Positions 11,303 to 41,900 of a stretch of DNA of 64,000 nt are shown here, one piece after another. The position numbers and the translations under genes were made by a program. This stretch comes from Styela clava (lineage: Eukaryota). The notes below the pieces were generated by a model. It ran no database searches, had not been told where the DNA came from, and saw only the letters and a program-made list of their open reading frames with translations. Position 1 is the stretch's first letter, and each line of letters starts with the position of its first letter. Location of the stretch: the NCBI RefSeq assembly GCF_964204865.1, contig NC_135252.1, forward strand, positions 10,478,001 to 10,542,000, written 5' to 3'.

Positions 11303-11549
11303 TGACGTCATAGCGGCTGCAACGTCATGACAAAAGATAATAAAATATCCAAAGAAGTGCTATTTTTAGACGCGGCGGAATCTATTTTGAGCGTCCAGCC
11401 AAATTTAGATCGCGTTGAATCTAATTTTGTTCACCTCATATCACGTGTCGATCAACATCAATGTCATTTGCCATGTTTTTATTATGAAAATGCGATTATA
11501 AAATGTAAAATGTTGTCTTCTCTCGACCTTAGTAAGAAGTATATAAAAG
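11303..11549 (+). promoter_or_regulatory. Candidate promoter of the Ser-rich gene: full CRE, half CRE, E-box, TATA box
   Basis: TGACGTCA 11303-11310, ACGTCA 11322-11327, CACGTG 11442-11447, TATATAAAAG 11540-11549, ~140 bp upstream of the first in-frame ATG (11683). Motif match only. Confidence 0.5.
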
Positions 11550-11682
11550 TCCCACTCTTGTTGAAACGGGCTTTATTTGCGACAACCCCTTGCGATATTG
11601 GTATCTGTATTCTTTCTAAAGTTGAAGTACATATGTGTATGCTTCTATATTTGAATCAAGGAGTGAAACTTCTCTGGATAGA

Positions 11683-14600
11683 ATGTTATCAAGTTTGGAA
11701 GCATCGAGCAACAATATTTCGTCGATTCCCATGAACTATACTGGGTCTATGAGTGCACTACTTTTCGATGACTCGATGGAGAAAATGGACGTCGACAAAA
11801 CGTCCTCAGATGTAACGAGGTATCTAGAAGAATACATTGAGTCCAGTTTTAATTTTGCAGAAACGACTTCTTCCTTTTCAGCAAGCCCCTGTTCAGATCA
11901 CACTTCTGTATCAAGAACGTCGTCAGATGAAGGTAGTTCAAATAAAATGACGCCAAGTTATACAGTATCAACATGTTCGGATGTTTTTTCGCCAACTGAT
12001 TCTAAAGACTGTAATTTCCAGCTGAACAACATGATTAACACTAGTACAGATGAGTTCCCGTATGAGGACGTTCTCTCATTAGAAAATGCGCTCGAGGAAG
12101 CCGTTGGAGATTCGTTGGAAAATGTTGGTAGCGTGAAAAGTGAATCGAACATGATTCAAAATTTATCGTCTCATACATCAATAAGCGGGCAAAATTTTAC
12201 GATGCCACAACCACCTAACTCAAACCCGCCTATAAGTAATGCGTTTCCAAAAGTATCTCACCGAGTAGTAATCAGTCCGACTACAACATTAGTTCTGTCC
12301 GATGACGTTATGCGTAAGAAACATCGCCCTCTTTCAACTAACAGCAAATCGACCTCTAAAATAGTGACATCAACCAGCAATCAACTACATCCTTCCATGG
12401 TGCAAAACAGGCCAATTTCATCGAGTTCTGGAAAAATCTCACCCGTAGCAATCAATGTAGGAAGTAACGATCATGCAATAACTTCACTTCATTCGATGAC
12501 GGCAAGCAACCAGAGCCCTCAGTCTGTGGAAACTTCTGACCATTTGGTAAGATGAATACATATAAGATATTGTGATCTTCCACCAACCAGTGTTGAACTT
12601 AATTAGATAGAGTAGTGAGTGTCAATTTTGTTTAGATCTGAACACGTTCAGGCAACAATAACATCTATTCAAACATACCATATTGCAGTTAGCAGAACAA
12701 GACGATCAGCAGAATGACGAGAATGTTGAGTGGTCTACCCCAAGGAAAAGCATCCAAGCAATACAAAAGAATCCACTTCCACCTGAAGGTTATAAGATAA
12801 CAAGATATCCATTGAAAAGTCAGACGGATAATAGAGAAGAAAACGTATGTTCAGCAATATTTCACCTTCGATATAATAAAGCTTGTATTATTGAAAAATC
12901 CATCCAAATATAATCAATGGTGATCTATTATTGTACTATTATGAGATAATTATTTTAAATCTTGACAAATTGCATTTGATTCGATTAGGTATATAAGGTT
13001 TGTGTTACCAAATAGTACTTGGAAGTATTAATATGATTATATTTATTTAGACCTGAGTACGAATTATATAACAGTTCTCCCCCTTTCGAAACCGGTTTTA
13101 TTCGCGACACTACCTTGCTATACTGATATCTGTATAATTAATTACCAATGTTGAATTACATGCTTCTATATTTGATTCAAGAAGTCCCGAAAGAATGTTC
13201 TTAAGTTTGGAAGCATCGAGTAGCAATATTCTGTCGATTTCCCTCAACTATAATGGTTGTATGAATGCACTATACTTCTCGAAGTCTTGTCCAAACATTT
13301 GAAATTAATTACATCTGCAACATGCTATGGACATTTGTATGAAATAGTATTACATTTAGAAAATACAAGATGAAACGACTGATATCATAAATGAACTACG
13401 ACATCAGCTTCAAAGGGCCAGGATGGAGGTTGATCATCGTCTGAAAGAAGTTGAAGAATGGAGATTATCTGCTCAACAAATATTTGATGCAGCAAGAAAA
13501 ATTCGGGCTCAAATGGAATTAGAAAAGGTATTGGAAATTTGTCCCAGCCTTGGCATAACGAATTTTTGCATTTGGTAATTGGCCAAATATAAATTTCTAT
13601 TTGGAAGCGTTGTTCAAAAAGATTGCTATTGTGAGATTTATATAAATTATCTGTCCACCATTGTAAAAATCACAAGCATTTTTCCCGGCACAAAAACTGA
13701 TAATTTAGATATGAGGGACGAAAAAAAGCAAACAACAAGTATAATGACAAAAATATTCTTGCAATCATTTTAACGTTTTAAAAATATTTTCTAAATCAAT
13801 TATGCAAGCATTTGTCCCATAACTCAACATTTTGCAAAGTGCATACAATAAATTGCATTTTATATATTTTAATGTTGCGCAAAAGTATTTACAAATAAAA
13901 CAAATTAATTTCAAAGTATAAAACTTTGTGTGCAATTTAAATTTTCAAGATATCCGCCATTTTGTTTTTCCCAGTGAAGTCTATAAAAATAGCAACAATC
14001 TAAAAATAAAATCAAGTTTAAAATTAGATTAATCCGAAAGGTATCGCAAACTTGATGAACTCTATTGCTTCATCGTAAAAATGGTTGTGAAATACCGCGT
14101 GTCGTTAATCATCGAGCTCAGATGTAAAATACCCTGGAGCATATTTTCGTTCGTCGTCACAAAAACTAGAGAATGTTTGAGCAAAACTTTCTGATGACGA
14201 TTGTTTTTTATGAAAATGTTGACGAAATACAAACTCTTAGCTAAGTTCAAAATTTTAGCGACAAACACAAATTAAAAATGATATACGGTATATGAAACAT
14301 TATGCGGATGGCGCAGTAAGAAATTCACGAATCTCACCCCGGCGTTTAAATCAATCAAAGCAGGAAAAAGTAATGTATTAATAAGGGGGTGAAATTGGAT
14401 CAAGATTTCCATACAATGTCACGTTGTAAAAATGTCTAATCTACTTAAATTTACAATTTATGCAGTCTCGAGCTGATCGTGCAGAATCGAAGATTGCCCA
14501 ACTCACTGCACACTTCAGATCAAAAGCTGCAGCAAAAGCGAGAGCAAAGTCCATCGGATCTGAGAAATCTGGAACATCCGGCAATGTAAATCAATCTTCA

Positions 14601-19999: not shown

Positions 20000-22456
20000 A
20001 AAGTCTGAGTGAAAACAAGTCGAAAGACTAAAACGTCTTAAATTTGAAAACTAATAATTTTCAACAAAGCGAATCAGAAATGAAGACAATGCAGAATCGC
20101 CAAATAACAATCAATTCCCATGCCTTTGTGGTTTGAAAATTGGCCTTGCAATTTTATTGTACGTTGTTACAGTCGGCATGTAATCCAGTTAGGTTAAGGT
20201 GTATAATTTGCTTTTAATACAGACGAAATCACATCCACACCATGCGAACAAATGTATGGCTTTCAGCTTTTCGAGATTTCAGCGGGGTTGAAATATACCG
20301 TCACCTCAATTGACTATTAATTGGTCCAGCCGGAAATTGAAGATTCATACTCGGAGGTTAGCCGTATTGTTTGAAATATGACAAAAAATTACCACATACA
20401 TTACCTTATACAATGCAAATAAAATAAATTTAACGTAGTTGGAATGATTGAGTTGTTCCAACTCTGAATTATTTGAAAAAATTGATAACCATATTAGCAG
20501 CACCGACCATGCTGGAAGGGATTAGTTGATTTGTATCGGCGATATGTCACGGTCCTATCGCTGTTGTGACGCATCTTGCGCGGTCTTCTGATTGATTTTT
20601 GAAGGAGAATATACGCAAACTCAACATTTTTTTAAGCTCAAGCGGATCCAATTTATTATATAAGTGCTTCCAGTGGGGGTAATAACATCAGCCGAGGAGA
20701 AGCCTCCGTACTACGCACTTGGAAAAAAAATTGTAGATATATTATATATACATGTATTGTCTGTATTGCCTGGGTTGCAGTATTGCGATATGTTTTCTAA
20801 TTTTTTAATGGAAAGGGAGTCCTTGAAGGTTTTGTATAGAAAGCTTATGCTCTAATTAAAATTTAAAACAGTAAAAATTCCCGTACAATAAAAAAGTGAG
20901 ATTGTGTTCGCCAAGAGATTAGATTTGTATTTTAGTCACAGTTTTAAAGAATGTACTAAGGAGCGATCTCATAATTAGTGAGTGCCTATTATTTTCATTC
21001 CGCACCTGCATATTCGAATATTACAACTTTTTCCAGTACGGCTGGACTCTTTAATTATTGTTTTATTTTTACATGTAAATACATTTATTCATAAGGGGGT
21101 TTGAAAATAGGAAATTTGATTAGAATGCATTTCATTCATATATGTTATTACACGCATTAAGCAGATTTTACTTTTGGGAATATAATCCTGAAACCGACAT
21201 ATTGAAATCGAACTTTAATGAAATGAGGAAATGTTAATCGCTATTAAATACTGGAGTAGAGAACAAAGCCACGGGCACTGTCATTAAATATATATATATA
21301 TATGGTTGCAATTTCTGGACTTCCATATTGGAATGTTGCTCTTCCAATATAAAGCGACGTTCAAATTCTAGTCAAACTTGAGTTAAAGATATTCGGGAGT
21401 GCGCAAATCAGGTTTTTTAAAAGTGCTTGCTATCGTGCTGAACATTTGCTTTGCTAATACCAGCAGGGTTTTTAAACTTGAAGGTGGAACTGACACCAGT
21501 TTTCACTATAGGCAAGACAGAGTAGTTTTGCATTTTCGGTTACAAATAAATATTTATTTGGCCGTTTTCAATCTTTTTTTCGGTCATCGCGATTTAGTTG
21601 GAAATACTGAATCCTAAAGTTGCTATTGCATGTGCTTCCATACATTTGTCTCTGACAGTGCACAAGACATTAGAATGTCACAAAACATGGTAGTATCGAA
21701 ATCATTCGCCGGATGCAAAAGTACGAGATAAATTGATCCGTTTTTTTAATTAGCAATTCGGACATTTATATAATTATATCTAAAATTAACTTGAACCGAT
21801 CGCATACATTTTCGTAGATATAAATAAATAAGCTTTCGCAGTTCTCATGCTGATGTGCAAGCTTGGTGTATGCAATTTTTATTATTAACTTATGCTTATT
21901 CCAATATGTTATCGGAAATCGTTGATTACAAAAGCAGGGAGTAAAGCACGCATTCATTCTAACACCAGTTTCATAAAATATTTTGTTTGATCGATTCTTA
22001 ACATATCTCGATTGTGTGCTATAATTTTATAACATACGATAATGCAGCCGTAATTTGTAGTTGAGGTGAGTATATTTAGCATAATATAGAGCGCTGTATT
22101 TAAAGTCAATATATATATTCTCTCGCAGCTGCGAATAATGTGCCTTTAGTTGTAGTAAATCTCCCTGTATTTGCGAATTATTCATACACCTGTTAAACAT
22201 TATGTAAATATATTGAGAACAAACCCCGCGCGAACGCATAAGCTGGCACTTAACACAGGTTGTAACATAATTATCCGACAACAGTGATTGGTAGACAATA
22301 TGATGTGGTGGTATATTCGACATTGCTGAAACTGATTTTAGACAAACGTTTTTATTAAAATCTTTCTGGTAAAAACGGTTTGGAGATTTACATTCGTTTT
22401 ACACATACTTGTTATTGTTATTTTCAGATTTTTAATAGATCAGTATTGTACAGTTT

Positions 22457-23529
22457 ATGAGAAACAGAAATATGACAAAAACACTGTTATTGTTTTTGGT
22501 TTTGTTTGGACTGGAATATTTCGTTGATTCGAAAAGTATTGTGAGTGATGATGAAGCAGCTGCAGAGAGCGACATCGAAAAAAGGCAGCATTGGTCATAT
22601 GGGTTTGCGCCAGGCGGTAAAAGAAGCTTTCCCCAAATCGCTGAACGTCAACACTGGTCATATGGATTTGCTCCGGGTGGTAAACGAGAAGAAATACCCA
22701 CAGACGTAGAAAAGAGGCAACATTGGTCGTATGGATTTGCACCAGGAGGAAAAAGAGAATTCAAGGACATGCCTAATATGCCTGAACTTAGTGAATTTGA
22801 AAAAAGACAACACTGGTCTTACGGTTTTGCTCCTGGTGGAAAGAGAGAATTTAACGATCAGAAAAGAACAGCTTGGCCCGTAGATATCCCGTTAAATGCT
22901 GAAGAAAAACGAAGTGTCTGGAATTATGGATGGGCTCCAAACGCAGAAAGAGAAATTGACCCAGGATATTTTATTCGACAATTGCTAATCGCGGTAAGTT
23001 CAGACACAAAAATAATCAGAAAGAAATTTAGAAGTCTATCAGAGATTTTCGATTGGGCTATTTTATCTCTACTCGGGCAAAAACAGATAGCCCTTCACCC
23101 CACCACGGTCATTTTAATCCTTTCCTACGCGTTAATTCTCCGAATCGAAATTTAGTATCAGACACAATCCCATTGTTAACCATATTGTAAAGATAAATTT
23201 GCAAAGTTTCGAAAAATCATTTCTCAACTACTACTGAAATGATGTTTATTACTTCCATTAGAGAGAGTGAGAGATTTTTTACTTCGTCAACCAAAAGAAA
23301 TTAACAGTCATCGTAATAATAAAAATAATAGCAATAAATTAATTTGATATAAACAGGAAGGAGTGATACGACCGGGCGGTCATCAAAGCCAACTCCCTCC
23401 TTTTCAGGTTAAGACTCACAATTTCAGATGACTAAATATAAAGGTAGAACATTCTATAGTTTAAAATTATAATGATCAATTTTTTGTCTGCAGAGGAATG
23501 TCAAAAGTAAAACTTACTCATACTTATAA
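22457..23529 (+). CDS. GNRH: Gonadotropin-releasing hormone polyprotein precursor (tunicate-type, 4 x QHWSYGFAPG-amide)
   Basis: Signal peptide MTKTLLLFLVLFGLEYFVDS (ATG 22457 or 22472); decapeptides at 22586-22615, 22649-22678, 22718-22747 and 22808-22837, each followed by G-K-R (amide donor plus dibasic site) and matching the GnRH signature QHWSxxxxPG. The main coding exon ends at the strong donor GCG|GTAAGT (22993); the last coding exon 23494-23529 (RNVKSKTYSYL*) after TTTTTTGTCTGCAG is inferred and less certain. An acceptor at 22427 implies a non-coding first exon upstream. Confidence 0.96.
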
Positions 23530-24963
23530 TTATATTACAAACAACGCAGAATCGACGGCAAAACACTGACCTTTGCCATTCAATGACATGTGAAGCAATA
23601 GATCATTAGATTTATCGAGAAATTTAAGCGGTTTAAAAATTGTACATTCGGGTGCGAAAAGTTTTACATTGTGACAAGAACATGTTGGCAAGTACAGAAT
23701 TGTACTGGCAAGTACAGAATTGGCATATAACGAATCGTTTGAAATCAAGAACGGTAAATTATTTATTATATTATCAAAATTAAGGAAGATAGTAGTTACA
23801 AAAGTTGCGTCAAACTTCTTTTCACTAAAACTCAGATTACAACAGCATTTGATAAATGGTATGGTAACCAGTAAATTATCCAAAGTTCTGTCATGAACTC
23901 AAATGTAACTTTGGGACTTTGCTTCGCGTTTGTCCTCATTTAGTACGCATGGACGAATTATATGTCATACCGTTAAGTATTAATTGAGATTACGGACCGA
24001 TATGAAAAACTTAAAATATATTCTCAAACAACTCGGTTATTTGACCGGAAAAGAATCCTATACGTTGATATCGCCTAGGGATAGGCGATAGGATAATACA
24101 TTAATAGAATATATGAGATTCGGGGACATTTTGATATTTTTGTATATATTCCCTTGTGTAACAAAGTTAGTTTAACGGGTATAAAAAGTATACTAAGGGC
24201 GAAATATTATATATATATTTCGTGACGACGCGGTATATTAAATACCATGTTACATGAAAATTATAGTCAAGTACCAGACATGATATCGCTCCCATTTCAA
24301 CTTTCCGTTTCGGAGTACTCCGACAATAAATGCTTTGCAAATCACCTCATCCGTATTTACGATTAATCAATACCTGAACTTGATCCCTATGTTCAATGAG
24401 CGTAAGTATTGATTAAAAACTCGGTCATTTATTATTAAAATGAACATTTTGTAAAATGATTTCGGTGATTCAAAAGACGTATTTGTATTAGTTCCACTTA
24501 CATTTTACCAGAGGTTCAATGTAATATAGGTATTTTAATTTGATATCAACTAAACTTTCTTTTGTACAAAAAAACGACATTTTAATGCCATTTTAGTCAT
24601 ATGCAGCTAATTAGATAATGTTGCGATCATCAATTTATATCATTCATTTACATGCGGGTGCACTGTAGTTCATTTAGTATTCATATTGACAATTCTCTAT
24701 AGGCATTCTGGCTTGAATTTAGCAGATGCTAGAAATGTATTGGGCAAACTCAACTACGGCTCGCCGTGGCATTTCGTGCGACCCCGTAAACTTAGAAAAA
24801 GTTGCGACAATTCTTTACAAGAACCAATTTGCGTCAGTTCATGATTTTACTTTGTTATCTAATATATTTCTTGAAAAATTCTTTAATTTGGGATATTTTA
24901 CATGTTATATTTTAACTGAAGGTAACTATATAATATGATCTTTTGAAGAAATAAAGTTTTTTT

Positions 24964-25095
24964 TCAATATTGTTGCTCTTTGCAAAACAAAAAAGATTTT
25001 CTGAATGCGGCCTTTGCAAAATAACTTTCTCAATATTGTTGCCCTTTGCAAAACAAAAAAGATTTTCTGAATGCGGCCTTTGCAAAATAACTTTC
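24964..25095. repeat. Tandem duplication, 66-bp unit, two near-identical copies
   Basis: TCAATATTGTTGC(T/C)CTTTGCAAAACAAAAAAGATTTTCTGAATGCGGCCTTTGCAAAATAACTTTC at 24964 and 25030. Confidence 0.92.
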
Positions 25096-26097
25096 ACCGC
25101 CCCTGGATTAGAATATATAAAATTGTTGGATTTAATAGCCATAGACCACATAATCATCACAAGCAATAATAAAATCTCTAAACTTATTTGAATCTAGAAA
25201 TCCATGATGGAATAAGAAGAACAAGGAAACAAAGAAAAATCGAAGAATAATATAAACGCTGAATTAAACTCGTATAAAAAGTAACCAAGATGAAGTCATT
25301 TATGGCGTAGTTGTGTATAGCCGAGGACATTTGTGATGCGACCTGAACAGCAATATATAACGTCTGATTTTTTGTGTTTAAAATTGTATTATTTTTCAAT
25401 AACCACTCGATTGCAGTTTCTGTTTGTTTTTTATAATGTAAGTTGGGACGCCGAGTTAATGACTTCTCACTGCAACAGCGCCTCGATGTATCATCTTCAG
25501 AAAAATCTCTCCTGTTAGTTAACGGTTGCAATTAAGATTTTAATACTTGTACTCCCATCAGCATGTCAGGCTATCAGACAATAAAAGCGAGTACGACCCC
25601 AAAATGAAAAATGGTGATATGTTCCGTATAAAAGAGCTACATTTCATAAATCATTATTCATGTTGTCCCAACGATGCGAGCATTTTTTTTTATATGTCCT
25701 GAATAATCTGAGTACATAACCTTGCAACCCGTTATACAATAGTGAGGTTGGGATTATAAACTAGGAAGGATAGAAACAGAATGACACATAGAAAAAATTA
25801 TTACCGCAATTGAGAGTTAAAATTTTAACATAGTTCAGTGATAAATCGGCATAAAAGTAGTTTTCGTTTTGAAGTCGATTGAAAGCGTATGAAATCAAAT
25901 ATATACAGCTAATAAACCTAAACTAAAAGTTTTCTCGAGATCAAGCGGTTTGTGAGCAGGTGCAATAACCAGCGTATGGGTAAATAAAAAAAAATGTAGG
26001 TCAGTGCTCTCCACCCAATCTTTTTTCTTGTGTGGCCTATAATCAGTTTGGGTAAAAGCGGTATGGCCCACTACTATCTTGTTAGAATTGGCTACAC

Positions 26098-26417
26098 CCG
26101 TGGTTCTCAAACTTTCATAATCAGTGGCCCGATTCCAAAGACTCTTAACACTTGCGGTCCCTGCTCCTCTATGAAAACACCTAGTTTAAATTTTAACGCG
26201 TTTCTATTAGTAATTTTATGCTCCACAATAAATAGCGAACAAACAAAAGCAAATAAAGAAGTGAATTACAGTAAAAAAATAACAAAAACGCAGTCAATTT
26301 ACTCCAAATTAATGTGGTTATGGCGAATGGTACGTCGCGCAGGTCTATGCTCGTGAACCCACAGAACCGTCTCGTGCCCCAATTCGGAGGGCCGATGGCC
26401 CAGTTTAAGGAACCCTG
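26098..26417. mobile_element. Probable decayed hAT-type MITE
   Basis: Begins CCGTGGTTCTCAAACT and ends AGTTTAAGGAACCCTG (imperfect TIR pair of the CAG-type hAT family); no clean TSD. Confidence 0.5.
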
Positions 26418-38000: not shown

Positions 38001-38957
38001 CTGCTCCAGTATCGTCCTTGTATTGATTCAGTCCAAAATGATCGTTTCGTGATATAGAATAATGTATCATCGCATTTTCATCTATATAAAAAAGCAAAAT
38101 ATTATATTTCTGTACTGACATAGTAATAATGCATAATATTTGGAACAAATCATACTTATATCTTCGTCGCTCGCCAAATATTGATCCAAGCTGATTTTAG
38201 TTAGTTCAGGTGTATCTTCGCTTATGTTGAGAGAGAAAATGCGATCGCCCCCAGTTTTTGGAAATTTAGGGGCGTGGTCATTGACGTCAGTTACAACCAG
38301 CTCAAAATCCTGCAGCCGAAAGTGGGCTTGGGGCATCATTGCAGTCTGTAAAGAATATATAAAACTATATTTCCTCTGTGTATTGCTCAGATAAATTCCA
38401 ACAAGCACATGGGTTACATAAAGGTATCCCGTGGCTGTGTATCTCCAGCGTTGGAAGAGTTTCAATTTAATATGGGAGATTTTGAAATTCGAGAATGATG
38501 AAATACAGTTAAATTAATTGTTTCACTGGCTAGAACGCCAATATTGTACACGTAGATATTAAGATAGTTTCTACAAGATTAATACCTGAAGCAATATGAC
38601 GCATTCTAGTTCTGGGTCATTTCCACATTCAGTTTCTCGATCTACTGGTTGATTAACAGTTATAACTCCCGTTTGTCGGTTGATTTTCAGCCATTTTCCT
38701 TCGGATGCAATTTCTTTATGTCCGGCTATCATTCTTTGTCCAAGTATTTCAAAAGTTCTTCCAGTTAGTTCTGCTGCTCTGACACTGAACAGTTCAGCTA
38801 ATTTTGCTACCACCGTTCCAGGCTCTTGCTCTTCTGGAAAGTCTATTCTGTATTTTCCACTTCCAGGTTGAGAGGCACAAAGTCTTGGAATGCACACAAC
38901 TAAAACTAAAGCATAAGCTAGAACGCTCCTACATCTCGTCAGGCCAAATGACCTCAT
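32099..38957 (-). CDS. PCDH: delta-2 (non-clustered) protocadherin, PCDH17/18/19-like
   Basis: 17 frame-consistent GT-AG coding exons (minus strand): 38957-38586, 38345-38156, 38081-37968, 37448-37312, 37089-36878, 36795-36641, 36461-36149, 36038-35861, 35669-35529, 35351-35181, 35012-34842, 34654-34433, 34227-34046, 33899-33788, 33609-33507, 33402-33259, 32997-32099. Signal peptide; six EC repeats (linkers DVNDHAP, DANDNYP, DVNDNPP, DANDHKP, DVNDHKP); EC1 Cys pair (DRETEC...EC); TM ITVIVLATLASATVILLLVLACIVI; juxtamembrane CRKENKEIRTYNCRAAE; CM1 RDSGKGESDKDSD; CM2 CTISCRKYGHSDECWMP; no CM3 RRVTF. An acceptor just before 38966 implies an upstream non-coding exon. Confidence 0.95.
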
Positions 38958-41900
38958 ACTTTCCACCTAAAAATAAAAGTGAAAGATCTTCCTTGTTACT
39001 CAAGAACTTGACTTGATTACTTGAGAATTATAATCGCACGAGGCGAAGAAATCTATTGTGTAAGTCTATACCCAATTTATTCGCGTAAAAGTACTTTGCT
39101 AATGTCACAGCGGGAGTCGATTTATTCGATTATTCCGGTTCGTTAAATGTATTCAAGCGCGAGAGCAATATCAAAGTTTTGAACCAATACCGTGTCACAT
39201 TTTTATAATCTCTTTAAGGCGGATAATTGGTGCGATAGTATCGGCCAGCGGGATAGAAATGTTAGGAGCCGTAACTAGCGGGAAGCAGACACGGGACGCA
39301 GACATAAGTTTCACTTTTTACACAATGATACATTCCACAAAACGATGGAATGTATGATCAATTCGAAAAACGTACGATACTGAAAATCACTCTATTTATT
39401 ATACACGATAACAACCCTAATTTGTCGTCCGTAGTCCTGTTTTGGGATGCAATTCATAAAAAAAAAACGACTGGAAACGTGTAGCCATTGCCTATTATAC
39501 TATTCTGAACTATTCTCGTTTTCTTATACACTCCTTCTATTAAAACGAAGGAGGACAAATTATACCCGAATCAACATTGCCAGACCACATGAGATAAATA
39601 ATGCATAAAAACTATGTCGCTACTTCGTGCTATCACAGGACTTGTCTTGGCAATCTGGCATCCATACTCAATCGATGCGATGTACTGGTGAGAAAACCAA
39701 TTAATTAAGGCTGAATTAAAACAATGAGGAGGCATCGATCACCCACTCTATTGTAATATTGAAACTTTACTGTTGAAAACGTGATGTGAAATTTGCGAAA
39801 GTTGTATGTTAACAACATGCCTGAACATTTTGCATCACAATTTATTTCTTTGCGATATTTTAAGATAATTCGAACGAAAAAATGGAGATCTTAGTTCGAT
39901 ATGGAATTACTCCAAGACCATGCCTGACAACAAATCGATTGATCCCGAAGTCAAGTTTTCGTGTTCATTACAGACTTTTCGACAAATGATATTAAACCAT
40001 CGATTTTTAAGAAAACGTATAGTTGATCGAGTTCAAAAATTCGGATTAAGCTCTTGTACCCTTTAACTTTGCATACAGGCAGACTGAAAATGACTAAAAA
40101 TCTCGAACTGTCTTTTCCACATTTTTCATAGTTCGTTATCTGTCTTTATAATCATATAAATTAATAAAATTATTCCTGACTTGCCCTGCATTACTGACCA
40201 ACTTCAAGTGAAGAAACGATGGTTTAGTAAATGAAATATTATAAACTAATTGGTAAGAAGGCGGTTTGCAAACGAACACCTCCAACACGCGCAAGTATAT
40301 TAATATTGTGTGAATTCAAATTGCCACCTTGCTCAAAAACAAACACAAAAGAACTAATTATTTAATTACTCTGCTAATTTATTATTGAGATTATGAAACG
40401 CGCCAATTTAAAACTGACACGCGCCGCTTAGCACGTTAACTTGAAGGCGTCTGTTCGCCCACCTTTTATTGCATTGTTAGTTTGCTGGTAATTATATTAA
40501 TTGCTATATTGTCCCTGCTTTTATTCAAGTTCAATATGACGATAAATTGTTCCAGCCCAATAAAATTAGCATGCGGCATACCGCTTTTGCAATGTATTAA
40601 TATTAGAATGAGCACAAAAAGTCAGTTATCTACAACAAGTAATATTGCTGTATAACGAACGAATAATTTTTTCGTTTTTACAATTTTGTAGGTACCATCA
40701 AACTGTCTTATGCTATTGGGTTGTTTCAACAAAGGTAGAAAACGTAGGAATATATCGTATTTTCATTTCAGATCTCTTTTAATTGTTTCGTTTTATATTC
40801 TCAGATTCAGAATCTTTTTGCATTTCTATCCATTGCTGGAACATAAGAATTTACCGCATATCCCAATACTGTTCTGATGTTTAATTATAAACTGAAGTAT
40901 ACATTATGCAAAATGAAGTTTCGGAATTGCTCCAGAATTAATTCCGTTTTCGCTTAAAGGCAATTTGTAACTTTTAAAACTTTTACACGTGCCATGGAGG
41001 TCAACAGTGAGTCCCGCATTACGTCAATTTATGGGTTTATAACGCTAACTCGTTAGATCACACTTAATTGGAAACGAAAATAATCAAATAATTTTTCAAA
41101 ATTATTCCGAATATTTATTTTATGTTTGAGTATGATATGACATGTAATCACGATGACGTGACATTCAGTAGCCAATGCGATCGATGCGTAAGATTCTGCG
41201 TTCAATATTACAATGTACTCTATATATTCTAGGCCCTTGTTCTTTGTATAACTTATAAAAGAAAGTTGTTCCTGTTTTAATAGGCTTGAAAGGACGCATT
41301 GGGTTTCAGATAAAAATGTTCGATCTACGGCCTGACCCCTGCGGTGCTTTAAAACATTGTACAAGTATGAATTTTTGCTAGAACAAGTTGCAAAGGAGCA
41401 GTGTTTGGCCAGATATGTAATTAAAATCCTGTATCGCCTTTATCGTCGTTTCACGACATGTCACTCACAAAACCTCCCGGGACAAAAATCTGTGACATAT
41501 CGCAGAAGTGTACGTCACCCGACCTTATTTTATTAGATTATAACTCAATATCAGAAGTCTGCTTGATATCGAATATAGAAATTAGGACACGTACTGAATT
41601 AGTTTCCACGAAATTTCCCTTTAACTAAGTCTTCAATCTCAAATTTAATTATAGCGCCAGTATGTAAGATGAATATCAGTCCCTCAGCAGTTCGGCTGTC
41701 AATTATTTAAGTAACTATACTCTTTGCCTAGAAATAGCTGTAACCGAATAATTCTAAATTTCACAATTTTTTTGCGCTCAATTTCGACTAATATAATTTG
41801 AACAACTTTAAATGTAAAATGTCATTCAATACGTATCAGCAAGTATTTTATGTTTGATATGAACCAAAATATTTGTACATTGTTAGTTATAGTAATTTCA

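What the first reader, a model, noticed from the sequence alone, without database searches (positions are those of the whole stretch)
22586..22846. GnRH precursor with four identical QHWSYGFAPG-amide copies
Seen: four cassettes in one exon. Established: vertebrate prepro-GnRHs carry one decapeptide right after the signal peptide; Ciona precursors carry several, mostly different, peptides. From memory, Halocynthia tGnRH-10/-11 are QHWSYGFSPG/QHWSYGFLPG; I do not recall the Ala8 form among tGnRH-1 to -11. It retains Tyr5-Gly6 as in vertebrate GnRH1/3. Inference: a possibly undescribed GnRH isoform amplified for dose rather than diversified.
Basis: partly seen in the sequence, partly recalled or inferred. 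Interest (0 to 1): 0.75.

Follow-up and report, generated by a model that had tools for sequence, protein, structure and literature searches.

The report
Sea-squirt GnRH gene, four identical copies
This is an expressed hormone-precursor gene of the sea squirt Styela clava that carries four identical copies of a reproductive-hormone-like peptide (QHWSYGFAPG), a form I could not find in the searchable literature; it is a new member of a known family, not a new kind of system.

Summary
Window 22586-22846 holds four QHWSYGFAPG-GKR cassettes in one exon of an ORF that starts with a signal-peptide-like segment. The window is Styela clava. The exon is identical to RefSeq XP_039266993.2, named only 'uncharacterized protein LOC120342289'. 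Pfam GnRH matches four times (56.8 bits, cutoff 18.5). The closest named relative is the Halocynthia roretzi prepro-GnRH. Contigs from three studies carry the spliced form with a 2204-nt GT..AG intron, so the gene is transcribed. The four 39-nt cassettes differ at 6-10 positions pairwise, needing at least 16 substitutions, all synonymous (naive P about 3e-11). The copies are therefore old and each is held by selection, not recently duplicated or homogenised. A fifth, decayed cassette follows. An unnamed relative carries seven identical copies of the same peptide, and two other precursor types carry one. No paper in the searchable library holds the peptide, and the published tGnRH-1 to -11 table lacks it. 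The mature amidated peptide, its receptor and the 'dose' idea remain inferred. Verdict: new member of a known kind, moderate interest.

The parts
22426..22427 (+). AG acceptor used for the 5' end of the mature mRNA, probably spliced-leader trans-splicing
   Evidence: X9 contig record 15 lies on 22426-22596 and has 20 further letters upstream. These are absent from the window and occur 619 times in the genome. In 6 of 6 inspected copies they are followed by AG and then unrelated sequence.
22428..22993 (+). Exon 1: 29-nt 5'UTR, start codon at 22457, residues 1-179
   Evidence: ORF. Identical to residues 1-179 of XP_039266993.2 = P0015. Contigs of X1, X2 and X9 end this exon at 22992/22993.
22457..22531 (+). 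Signal-peptide-like N-terminus (residues 1-25; cleavage site inferred, not predicted by a dedicated tool)
   Evidence: Kyte-Doolittle 11-residue mean peaks at 2.86 for residues 9-19. The pattern of a hydrophobic stretch followed by [KR][ST][IL]xS is shared with P0002 and Halocynthia P0005.
22586..22624 (+). Cassette 1: KR|QHWSYGFAPG|GKR
22649..22687 (+). Cassette 2: ER|QHWSYGFAPG|GKR (single Arg upstream)
   Evidence: The RefSeq version-1 allele has GRR instead of GKR (P0001).
22718..22756 (+). Cassette 3: KR|QHWSYGFAPG|GKR
22808..22846 (+). Cassette 4: KR|QHWSYGFAPG|GKR
22868..22906 (+). KR-flanked spacer peptide TAWPVDIPLNAEE, collinear with ENWPYEKFIP... of the Halocynthia precursor; function unknown
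Evidence: BLASTP third HSP, E 2e-14.
22913..22951 (+). Decayed fifth cassette SVWNYGWAPNAER (no Gln1, His2, Gly10 or amidation Gly)
   Evidence: 6 of 13 residues match the cassette; 8 of 20000 shuffles of the 132 non-cassette residues reach that. It aligns with cassette 7 of P0002 and with tGnRH-11 of Halocynthia. Pfam does not recognise it (protein 6: 0 families).
22994..25197 (+). Intron, 2204 nt, GT..AG
   Evidence: Joint 'skips 2204' in one contig each of X1, X2 and X9, from three studies.
25198..25215 (+). Exon 2 coding part: KSMME + TAA stop
   Evidence: matches the C-terminus of P0015.
25216..25713 (+). 3'UTR as far as contigs reach (true 3' end not determined)
   Evidence: X9 record 17 lies on 25197-25713.

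Best explanation
The locus is the Styela clava prepro-GnRH gene (RefSeq LOC120342289, unnamed there). It has two coding exons. Its mRNA probably receives a spliced leader 29 nt before the ATG. The 184-residue product has a signal peptide, a short acidic pro-region, four identical QHWSYGFAPG units each followed by Gly-Lys-Arg, one KR-flanked spacer peptide, one decayed fifth unit and a short C-terminal tail. Inferred processing follows the general neuropeptide pathway (established knowledge, not tested here). Prohormone convertases cut at KR, and at the single Arg before unit 2. A carboxypeptidase removes the basic residues. Peptidylglycine alpha-amidating mono-oxygenase uses the Gly to amidate Gly10. 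The N-terminal Gln cyclises. This would give up to four molecules of pQHWSYGFAPG-NH2 (calculated [M+H]+ 1131.50) per precursor. The peptide is expected to act on GnRH-receptor-type GPCRs, as the Ciona tGnRHs do. The four copies are old duplicates, each kept identical by purifying selection on the peptide and its processing sites. That fits a design that raises peptide yield per transcript instead of producing a cocktail of isoforms. Shown here: sequence, gene model, transcription and splicing, family membership, selection on the copies, and conservation in relatives. Inferred: processing, amidation, receptor, physiology and the dose rationale.
For: Sequence and ORF. Pfam GnRH matches 4 stretches, 56.8-57 bits against an 18.5 cutoff. 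Exon 1 is 100% identical to XP_039266993.2, Styela clava. The best named homologue is Halocynthia roretzi progonadoliberin J7M3X0 (database E 6.4e-15; pairwise E 3e-24). The spliced form is present in contigs of 3 of the 4 runs laid, from 3 different studies. The cassettes show 11 variable columns and at least 16 substitutions, all synonymous; about 22% of random single changes would be synonymous, giving a naive P of 2.6e-11. Spacers differ in length and sequence. P0002 has 7 identical copies of the same decapeptide at 53% overall identity. The two protein differences between RefSeq versions (R2K, K76R) and the one exon-1 SNP seen in contigs (22552 T>C, third position of Asp32 by my reading of the frame) leave the decapeptides untouched. 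A single Arg before QHW occurs in 8 of the 14 cluster representatives.
Against: No peptide-level evidence exists: pGlu, amidation and cleavage are not shown. Unit 2 has only a single Arg upstream (IAER|Q) with no basic residue at P4 or P6, so it may be released less efficiently or with an extension. No GnRH receptor was looked for in this genome. The runs are coded and their library type is 'not on record', so the tissue and stage of expression are unknown, and contigs give no expression level. The dose idea has no direct test. The selection P value assumes uniform mutation and independent substitutions.
Confidence: 0.86

Rival explanations
1. The gene is real, but the peptide or precursor is already described in literature I could not search (subscription journals, supplements, theses). 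Only the novelty claim would then fall.
For: The library holds open-access papers and bioRxiv only. Supplements were closed. The Halocynthia paper (Hasunuma and Terakado 2013) is itself not in the library and is known to me only from reference lists. The protein has been public in RefSeq since the first S. clava annotation.
Against: 0 papers hold QHWSYGFAPG, three overlapping sub-strings or the three-letter form. 0 papers hold tGnRH-12 or -13. The 2020 review table lists twelve ascidian GnRHs without it. The two of the 13 'Styela clava + GnRH' papers that carried a term in title and abstract, and one other that I opened, mention GnRH only for Ciona or in references. RefSeq and UniRef give no GnRH name.
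Confidence: 0.15
2. The four copies are identical because they are recent duplicates or are homogenised by gene conversion, or are an assembly artefact, not because each is under selection.
For: Identical amino-acid repeats are what recent tandem duplication gives.
Against: Pairwise, 6-10 of 39 nt differ, and 11 of 12 degenerate codons vary. TRF sees no DNA repeat. Spacers are unrelated in length. Independent transcript contigs reproduce the exon: X1 with 0 differences over 564 nt and X2 with 2 over 547 nt. A relative at 53% identity has the same peptide 7 times.
Confidence: 0.02
3. The multi-copy state is not a dose adaptation. It is simply the inherited multi-cassette layout of tunicate GnRH genes, in a lineage where a single receptor-ligand pair constrains all cassettes to one sequence. 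Under this view copy number (4 here plus 1 decayed, 7 in the relative) drifts.
For: All 14 homologue clusters have 2-7 cassettes. S. clava has lost one cassette by decay. Copy number differs between the two species with identical copies (4 against 7). The second S. clava gene keeps three different peptides.
Against: Drift in copy number does not explain why at least 16 substitutions spared every residue of four units. That shows each unit matters, which is also what a yield function predicts. The two readings differ only in the reason for retention, and sequence cannot separate them.
Confidence: 0.3
4. The precursor's important products include non-GnRH peptides (TAWPVDIPLNAEE, SVWNYGWAPNAE or the C-terminal tail), so it is a mixed precursor, not a pure four-fold GnRH source.
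For: Both stretches are bounded by KR or R sites (protein string). The WP...IP stretch is collinear with a similar stretch in Halocynthia.
Against: Neither has an amidation Gly. The second is best read as a decayed cassette. P0002 has an intact GnRH cassette at that place. Conservation of the WP stretch rests on one pairwise alignment that is driven mostly by the flanking cassettes.
Confidence: 0.15

Closest known systems
Halocynthia roretzi prepro-GnRH (J7M3X0_HALRO; tGnRH-10 QHWSYGFSPG and tGnRH-11 QHWSYGFLPG; Hasunuma and Terakado 2013, cited)
   Same: Both are from ascidians of the order Stolidobranchia; PMC6048306 lists Halocynthia's GnRHs under that order, and S. clava's placement in it is recalled. 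Both have a signal peptide followed by an acidic pro-region ending in KR. Both have the QHWSYGF-x-PG-GKR cassette and the 'GKREF' spacer start. The order cassette, WP-containing stretch, cassette is collinear. Identity is 42% over the aligned part.
   Different: Position 8 is Ala instead of Ser or Leu. There are four identical cassettes instead of two different ones. The unit that aligns with tGnRH-11 is decayed in S. clava. Length is 184 against 134 residues.
Ciona intestinalis / C. savignyi gnrh1 and gnrh2 triplet precursors (tGnRH-3 to -9; Adams et al. 2003, as summarised in PMC7697785)
   Same: Several GnRH decapeptides sit on one precursor, each with Gly plus basic residues. The QHWS...PG frame is the same. 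P0012 (C. savignyi) is a database hit (E 1.9e-6).
   Different: Ciona cassettes differ from one another and, in P0012, abut directly (GKR-QHW). The S. clava cassettes are identical and separated by 5-15 residue spacers.
Vertebrate GnRH1 (pQHWSYGLRPGa) and GnRH3 (QHWSYGWLPG) as quoted
   Same: 8 of 10 residues match each, including Tyr5-Gly6. The C-terminal Gly-Lys-Arg processing signal is the same.
   Different: In vertebrates there is one copy, directly after the signal peptide and followed by a long GnRH-associated peptide (established knowledge; single-copy statement). Here there are four copies behind a pro-region, with only a 19-residue tail after the last KR/R site.
Prepro-TRH-type polyproteins (iterated identical short amidated pGlu peptides)
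   Same: The architecture is analogous: repeated identical Gln-...-Gly-Lys-Arg units between divergent spacers. Pfam TRH gives a weak sub-threshold match that reflects this layout (13.8-21.2 bits, cutoff 27.8).
   Different: No homology is shown: the score is below the Pfam cutoff, and the peptide is a GnRH decapeptide, not pGlu-His-Pro-NH2.

Membership tests
GnRH (Pfam PF00446; tunicate tGnRH group) | Decapeptide frame Gln1-His2-Trp3-Ser4 ... Pro9-Gly10, as stated for all ascidian and vertebrate GnRHs in PMC7697785 | tested here: met
   4 of 4 cassettes read QHWSYGFAPG. The consensus is quoted.
GnRH (Pfam PF00446; tunicate tGnRH group) | Score above Pfam's gathering threshold | tested here: met
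   57 and 56.8 bits against 18.5, with 4 stretches.
GnRH (Pfam PF00446; tunicate tGnRH group) | Amidation/processing signal Gly + dibasic after the peptide, and a cleavage site before Gln1 | tested here: met
   GKR follows 4 of 4 cassettes. KR precedes 3 of 4 and a single Arg (ER) precedes 1 of 4.
GnRH (Pfam PF00446; tunicate tGnRH group) | Secretory precursor with N-terminal signal peptide | tested here: inconclusive
   A hydrophobic core at residues 9-19 (mean KD 2.86) is followed by a polar stretch. No dedicated signal-peptide predictor was available.
GnRH (Pfam PF00446; tunicate tGnRH group) | Sequence homology of the whole precursor to a characterised tunicate prepro-GnRH | tested here: met
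   Halocynthia roretzi J7M3X0: E 6.4e-15, pairwise 3e-24, with collinear layout.
GnRH (Pfam PF00446; tunicate tGnRH group) | Gene is transcribed | tested here: met
   Spliced contigs in X1, X2 and X9, from three studies.
GnRH (Pfam PF00446; tunicate tGnRH group) | Mature pGlu / C-terminally amidated peptide present in tissue | not testable with these tools
   Needs mass spectrometry; expected [M+H]+ 1131.5007.
GnRH (Pfam PF00446; tunicate tGnRH group) | Activates a GnRH-receptor-type GPCR | not tested
   No receptor query sequence was available from a tool, and no receptor search was made in G000.
TRH precursor (Pfam PF05438) | Score above Pfam's gathering threshold | tested here: not met
   13.8-14.2 bits against 27.8. 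This is a resemblance of layout only.

The most novel reading that the evidence does not exclude
Styelid sea squirts turned the chordate GnRH gene into a TRH-like polyprotein that delivers 4-7 identical peptides per transcript, each copy held unchanged since before the two species split. In this reading QHWSYGFAPG-amide is an old, widely shared tunicate GnRH: it is present in three different precursor layouts (4 of 14 clusters), and it sits closer to vertebrate GnRH1/GnRH3 (8 of 10 residues) than the Ciona peptides I compared by eye with the table. It would be the first GnRH gene known to me with iterated identical copies. It would also offer a natural test of copy number as a way to set hormone output.
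Probability: 0.3. Interest if true: 0.55.

Novelty: new member of a known kind. Interest (0 to 1): 0.4.

Why it matters
GnRH is the master reproductive peptide of vertebrates, and tunicates are their closest invertebrate relatives. In Ciona, GnRH is linked to metamorphosis (GABA-GnRH axis; passage in PMC11988888). Styela clava is a worldwide invasive fouling species and a growing laboratory model. A defined, single, easily synthesised GnRH isoform gives a direct handle on its spawning and settlement biology. For evolution, the gene shows that multi-copy tunicate GnRH precursors can go two ways. They can diversify, as in Ciona, Halocynthia and the second S. clava gene. Or they can stay strictly uniform, as in this gene and its 7-copy relative. 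The uniform state here is demonstrably kept by selection. The finding is incremental: it extends a known family and does not change how GnRH signalling is understood.

Tried and rejected
Tandem Repeats Finder on 22300-23100 gave 0 rows. The cassettes are not a DNA-level tandem array, so I compared them codon by codon instead.

tblastn of all 14 homologues against the window found only this one locus, so there is no second GnRH gene in the window. The paralogue lies 457 kb upstream.

Pfam on nine other long ORFs of the window gave only one cadherin-like hit above the cutoff, so no synteny argument was attempted.

I considered a second word search with P0002, or with a short piece, and the large representative search. 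I left both out. The first search already took every 98-313-residue protein sharing 5-residue words with the cassette as a candidate.

I considered structure prediction and rejected it as uninformative for a short, unstructured neuropeptide precursor.

I first took the 20 extra letters on the X9 contig for an upstream 5'UTR exon. That was rejected: they are absent from the window and present 619 times genome-wide, each time followed by AG in the 6 of 619 copies I inspected. I also considered an LTR origin, because many copies sit in same-strand pairs 5-7 kb apart. The differing sequences right after AG, and the earlier notes on leader genes hit by retrotransposons, fit a spliced leader better. 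This was only partly checked.

Literature searches that returned nothing relevant. I read listings and abstract starts only, except for the passages opened.

Exon 1 was searched alone. Exon 2 (five codons and a stop) is too short to search. The full-length database protein P0015 was used as the tools returned it.

Full report
OBSERVATION. The + strand between 22457 and 22993 is an open frame whose product begins MRNRNMTKTLLLFLVLFGLEYFVDS. It contains QHWSYGFAPGGKR four times, at nt 22586, 22649, 22718 and 22808, each 39 nt long. The finding's coordinates, 22586-22846, are exactly the first base of the first unit to the last base of the fourth. The window has no N and is AT-rich (GC 0.30-0.39 in 2-kb windows).

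WHOSE GENE. A word search with exon 1 alone (179 residues) gave 14 proteins among 1381 candidates. The top hit, at 99% identity, is 'uncharacterized protein LOC120342289 [Styela clava]' (XP_039266993.1). Version .2 of that record (P0015) is identical to the window over all 179 residues and ends with five more residues, KSMME. The window is G000:C3:10478001-10542000. Neither RefSeq nor UniRef gives the protein a GnRH name.

GENE MODEL AND EXPRESSION. KSMME plus a stop lies at 25198-25215 behind an AG. I laid contigs of four runs on 20600-26400. One contig each in X1, X2 and X9, which come from three different studies, skips 2204 nt with GT..AG ends and joins 22993 to 25198. The fourth run, X10, labelled as another organism, has only a 192-nt piece inside exon 1. 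The runs' library type is not on record, but a precisely intron-less form shows that they contain mRNA. So the gene is transcribed and spliced as RefSeq models it. Contigs say nothing about level, tissue or stage.

At the 5' end, the X9 contig carries 20 letters just before the AG at 22426-22427. These letters are absent from the window (0 matches with up to 2 mismatches) and occur 619 times in the genome (the reversed control gave 0). In 6 of 6 copies I inspected they are followed by AG and then by unrelated sequence. Earlier notes of this scan describe spliced-leader RNA genes in this genome with an AAG|GTA exon-intron junction that retrotransposons target (I did not re-test those notes beyond). 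I therefore read the mRNA as SL trans-spliced 29 nt before the ATG. This is probable, not proven. The 3' end is not determined; contigs reach 25713.

FAMILY. Pfam GnRH (PF00446) matches four stretches at 57 bits against a cutoff of 18.5. The nearest named relative is the Halocynthia roretzi progonadoliberin J7M3X0 (P0005; E 6.4e-15, pairwise 3e-24 and 42% identity), which carries QHWSYGFSPG and QHWSYGFLPG. The other hits are tunicate-type precursors with two or three different QHW...PG units, named ones being Clavelina lepadiformis and Ciona savignyi.

SELECTION ON THE COPIES. Pairwise, the four 39-nt units differ at 6-10 positions. Eleven columns vary, needing at least 16 substitutions, and every one is synonymous. 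Eleven of the 12 codons that can vary silently do vary. Only about 22% of random single changes in these units would be silent, so the naive probability of 16 silent changes out of 16 is 2.6e-11 (this assumes uniform mutation and independence). The spacers between units differ in length (7, 8 and 15 residues between units, then 5 before the next KR) and in sequence. TRF sees no DNA repeat. The copies are therefore old and are not being homogenised at the DNA level. Each is individually constrained at the level of the peptide and its Gly-Lys-Arg signal.

Variation between individuals points the same way. The two protein differences between the RefSeq versions are R2K and K76R (GKR to GRR, still dibasic). 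The one difference listed in exon 1 (table 3; table 8 counts two other letters in the X2 contig), 22552 T>C, falls on the third position of Asp32 by my reading of the frame. By contrast, the X9 contig shows 20 substitutions and 4 indel places in the 3'UTR.

A FIFTH, DECAYED UNIT. After unit 4 come EFNDQ-KR-TAWPVDIPLNAEE-KR-SVWNYGWAPNAER. The last 13 residues match the cassette at 6 of 13 positions (W3, Y5, G6, A8, P9, R13). Only 8 of 20000 shuffles of the 132 non-cassette residues give any 13-mer as good. In the three-way alignment this unit sits opposite the seventh intact unit of P0002. In the pairwise comparison it sits opposite tGnRH-11 of Halocynthia, with TAWPVD-IP opposite ENWPYEKFIP. 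I read it as a dead cassette. Pfam does not recognise it.

RELATIVES WITH THE SAME PEPTIDE. Of the 14 cluster representatives, four hold QHWSYGFAPG. These are the S. clava protein (4 copies), P0002 (260 residues, 53% identical, seven copies and nothing else), and P0006 and P0007 (one copy each, followed by GKKR, plus QHWSNSWQPG and QHWSFGYGPG). P0004 has the His5 variant QHWSHGFAPG. Only S. clava and P0002 repeat one peptide. P0002, P0004, P0006 and P0007 come from unnamed Logan, NCBI, ENA and JGI contigs.

THE REST OF THE GENOME. Searching G000 with P0015 and P0023 found two GnRH-type genes only: this one, and LOC120342299 at C3:10043322-10044847 on the same strand, 457 kb upstream. The search scores only the best candidates, so two is a lower bound. 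The second gene encodes three different Thr4 peptides (QHWTTGIGPG, QHWTSGLAPG, QHWTTGLSPG) and just reaches the Pfam cutoff (19.0 against 18.5). So S. clava has one uniform and one diversified GnRH gene.

IS IT IN PRINT? I found 0 papers for the decapeptide. I also found 0 for three overlapping sub-strings and the three-letter form, and 0 for tGnRH-12 or -13 (its 2 hits hold only the -11 terms). The string QHWSYGF occurs in one paper, PMC6048306, whose passages list only the Ser8 and Leu8 Halocynthia forms. Passages and Table 1 of PMC7697785 state that twelve ascidian GnRHs were known in 2020 and list tGnRH-1 to -11 and Ci-GnRH-X; none is the Ala8 form. Thirteen papers hold 'Styela clava' and 'GnRH'. 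I opened passages of three; they cite GnRH only for Ciona or in reference lists. For the others, and, I saw listings and abstract starts only. Subscription journals, the Halocynthia paper itself and all supplements were out of reach, so 'undescribed' holds only within those limits.

HOW IT MOST LIKELY WORKS. The following steps are inferred from the general neuropeptide pathway. The precursor is co-translationally secreted. Convertases cut at KR and at the single Arg before unit 2; a single Arg before QHW is seen in 8 of the 14 representatives. The basic residues are removed, Gly is used for amidation, and Gln1 cyclises. This gives up to four pQHWSYGFAPG-NH2 per precursor ([M+H]+ 1131.5007). 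By analogy with Ciona, where tGnRHs act on Ci-GnRHR1-4 through cAMP or Ca2+ (Table 1 of PMC7697785) and a GABA-GnRH axis regulates tail regression (passage in PMC11988888), the peptide should act on GnRHR-type receptors in metamorphosis. A role in gamete release is recalled and comes from no call here. The 'dose' rationale fits the data, namely identical units each kept by selection and seven in a relative, but it is untested. An alternative is that a single receptor constrains all inherited cassettes while copy number drifts.

VERDICT. This is a real, expressed prepro-GnRH gene with a peptide isoform that I could not find described. It is a new member of a known kind. The uniform multi-copy layout kept by selection is its one unusual feature.

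Noticed in passing
window 22426-22427, and L011-L016: The GnRH mRNA seems to receive a spliced leader. A 20-letter 5' extension on an RNA contig is absent from the window, has 619 genome copies, and is followed by AG and then unrelated sequence in the 6 copies inspected. Many copies sit in same-strand pairs 5-7 kb apart.
   Followed up: partly
G000:C3:10043322-10044847 (L004-L006): A second GnRH-type gene, LOC120342299, lies 457 kb upstream on the same strand. It has three coding pieces and three different Thr4 peptides, one followed by Gly-Arg only. The two RefSeq versions differ in length (209 against 247 residues).
   Followed up: partly
window 25216-25713: The 3'UTR is far more polymorphic between individuals than exon 1. 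The X9 contig has 20 substitutions and 4 indel places there, against 1 difference in its 490 nt of exon-1 pieces.
   Followed up: no
window 23271-23505 and 24859-25087 (inside the intron): Short low-identity contig pieces with loose ends on both sides lie here in X1, X2 and X9. This suggests fragments of dispersed, transcribed repeats in the intron.
   Followed up: no
window 22637-22828: Run X10, labelled as a different organism (B), holds a 192-nt contig of this exon with one mismatch at depth 2.9. It may be carry-over between samples or a very close relative.
   Followed up: no
window 38571-38966 (- strand): An ORF with a cadherin-like domain (Cadherin_2, E 1.2e-10, above the cutoff), probably an exon of a protocadherin-type gene about 13 kb downstream of the GnRH gene.
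   Followed up: no
window 11327-12555 (+ strand): Two overlapping long ORFs (135 and 306 residues) have no Pfam family above the cutoff. They lie near the 'orphan gene' that another first-stage note places at 13050-13302.
   Followed up: no
P0003, P0004, P0006, P0007 (unnamed sources): A second conserved precursor layout has three different units in fixed order: QHWS[HY]GF[AM]PG, then QHWSNSWQPG, then QHWS[YF]G[FY]GPG. It recurs in four clusters from ENA, JGI, Logan and NCBI contigs of unknown species.
   Followed up: no
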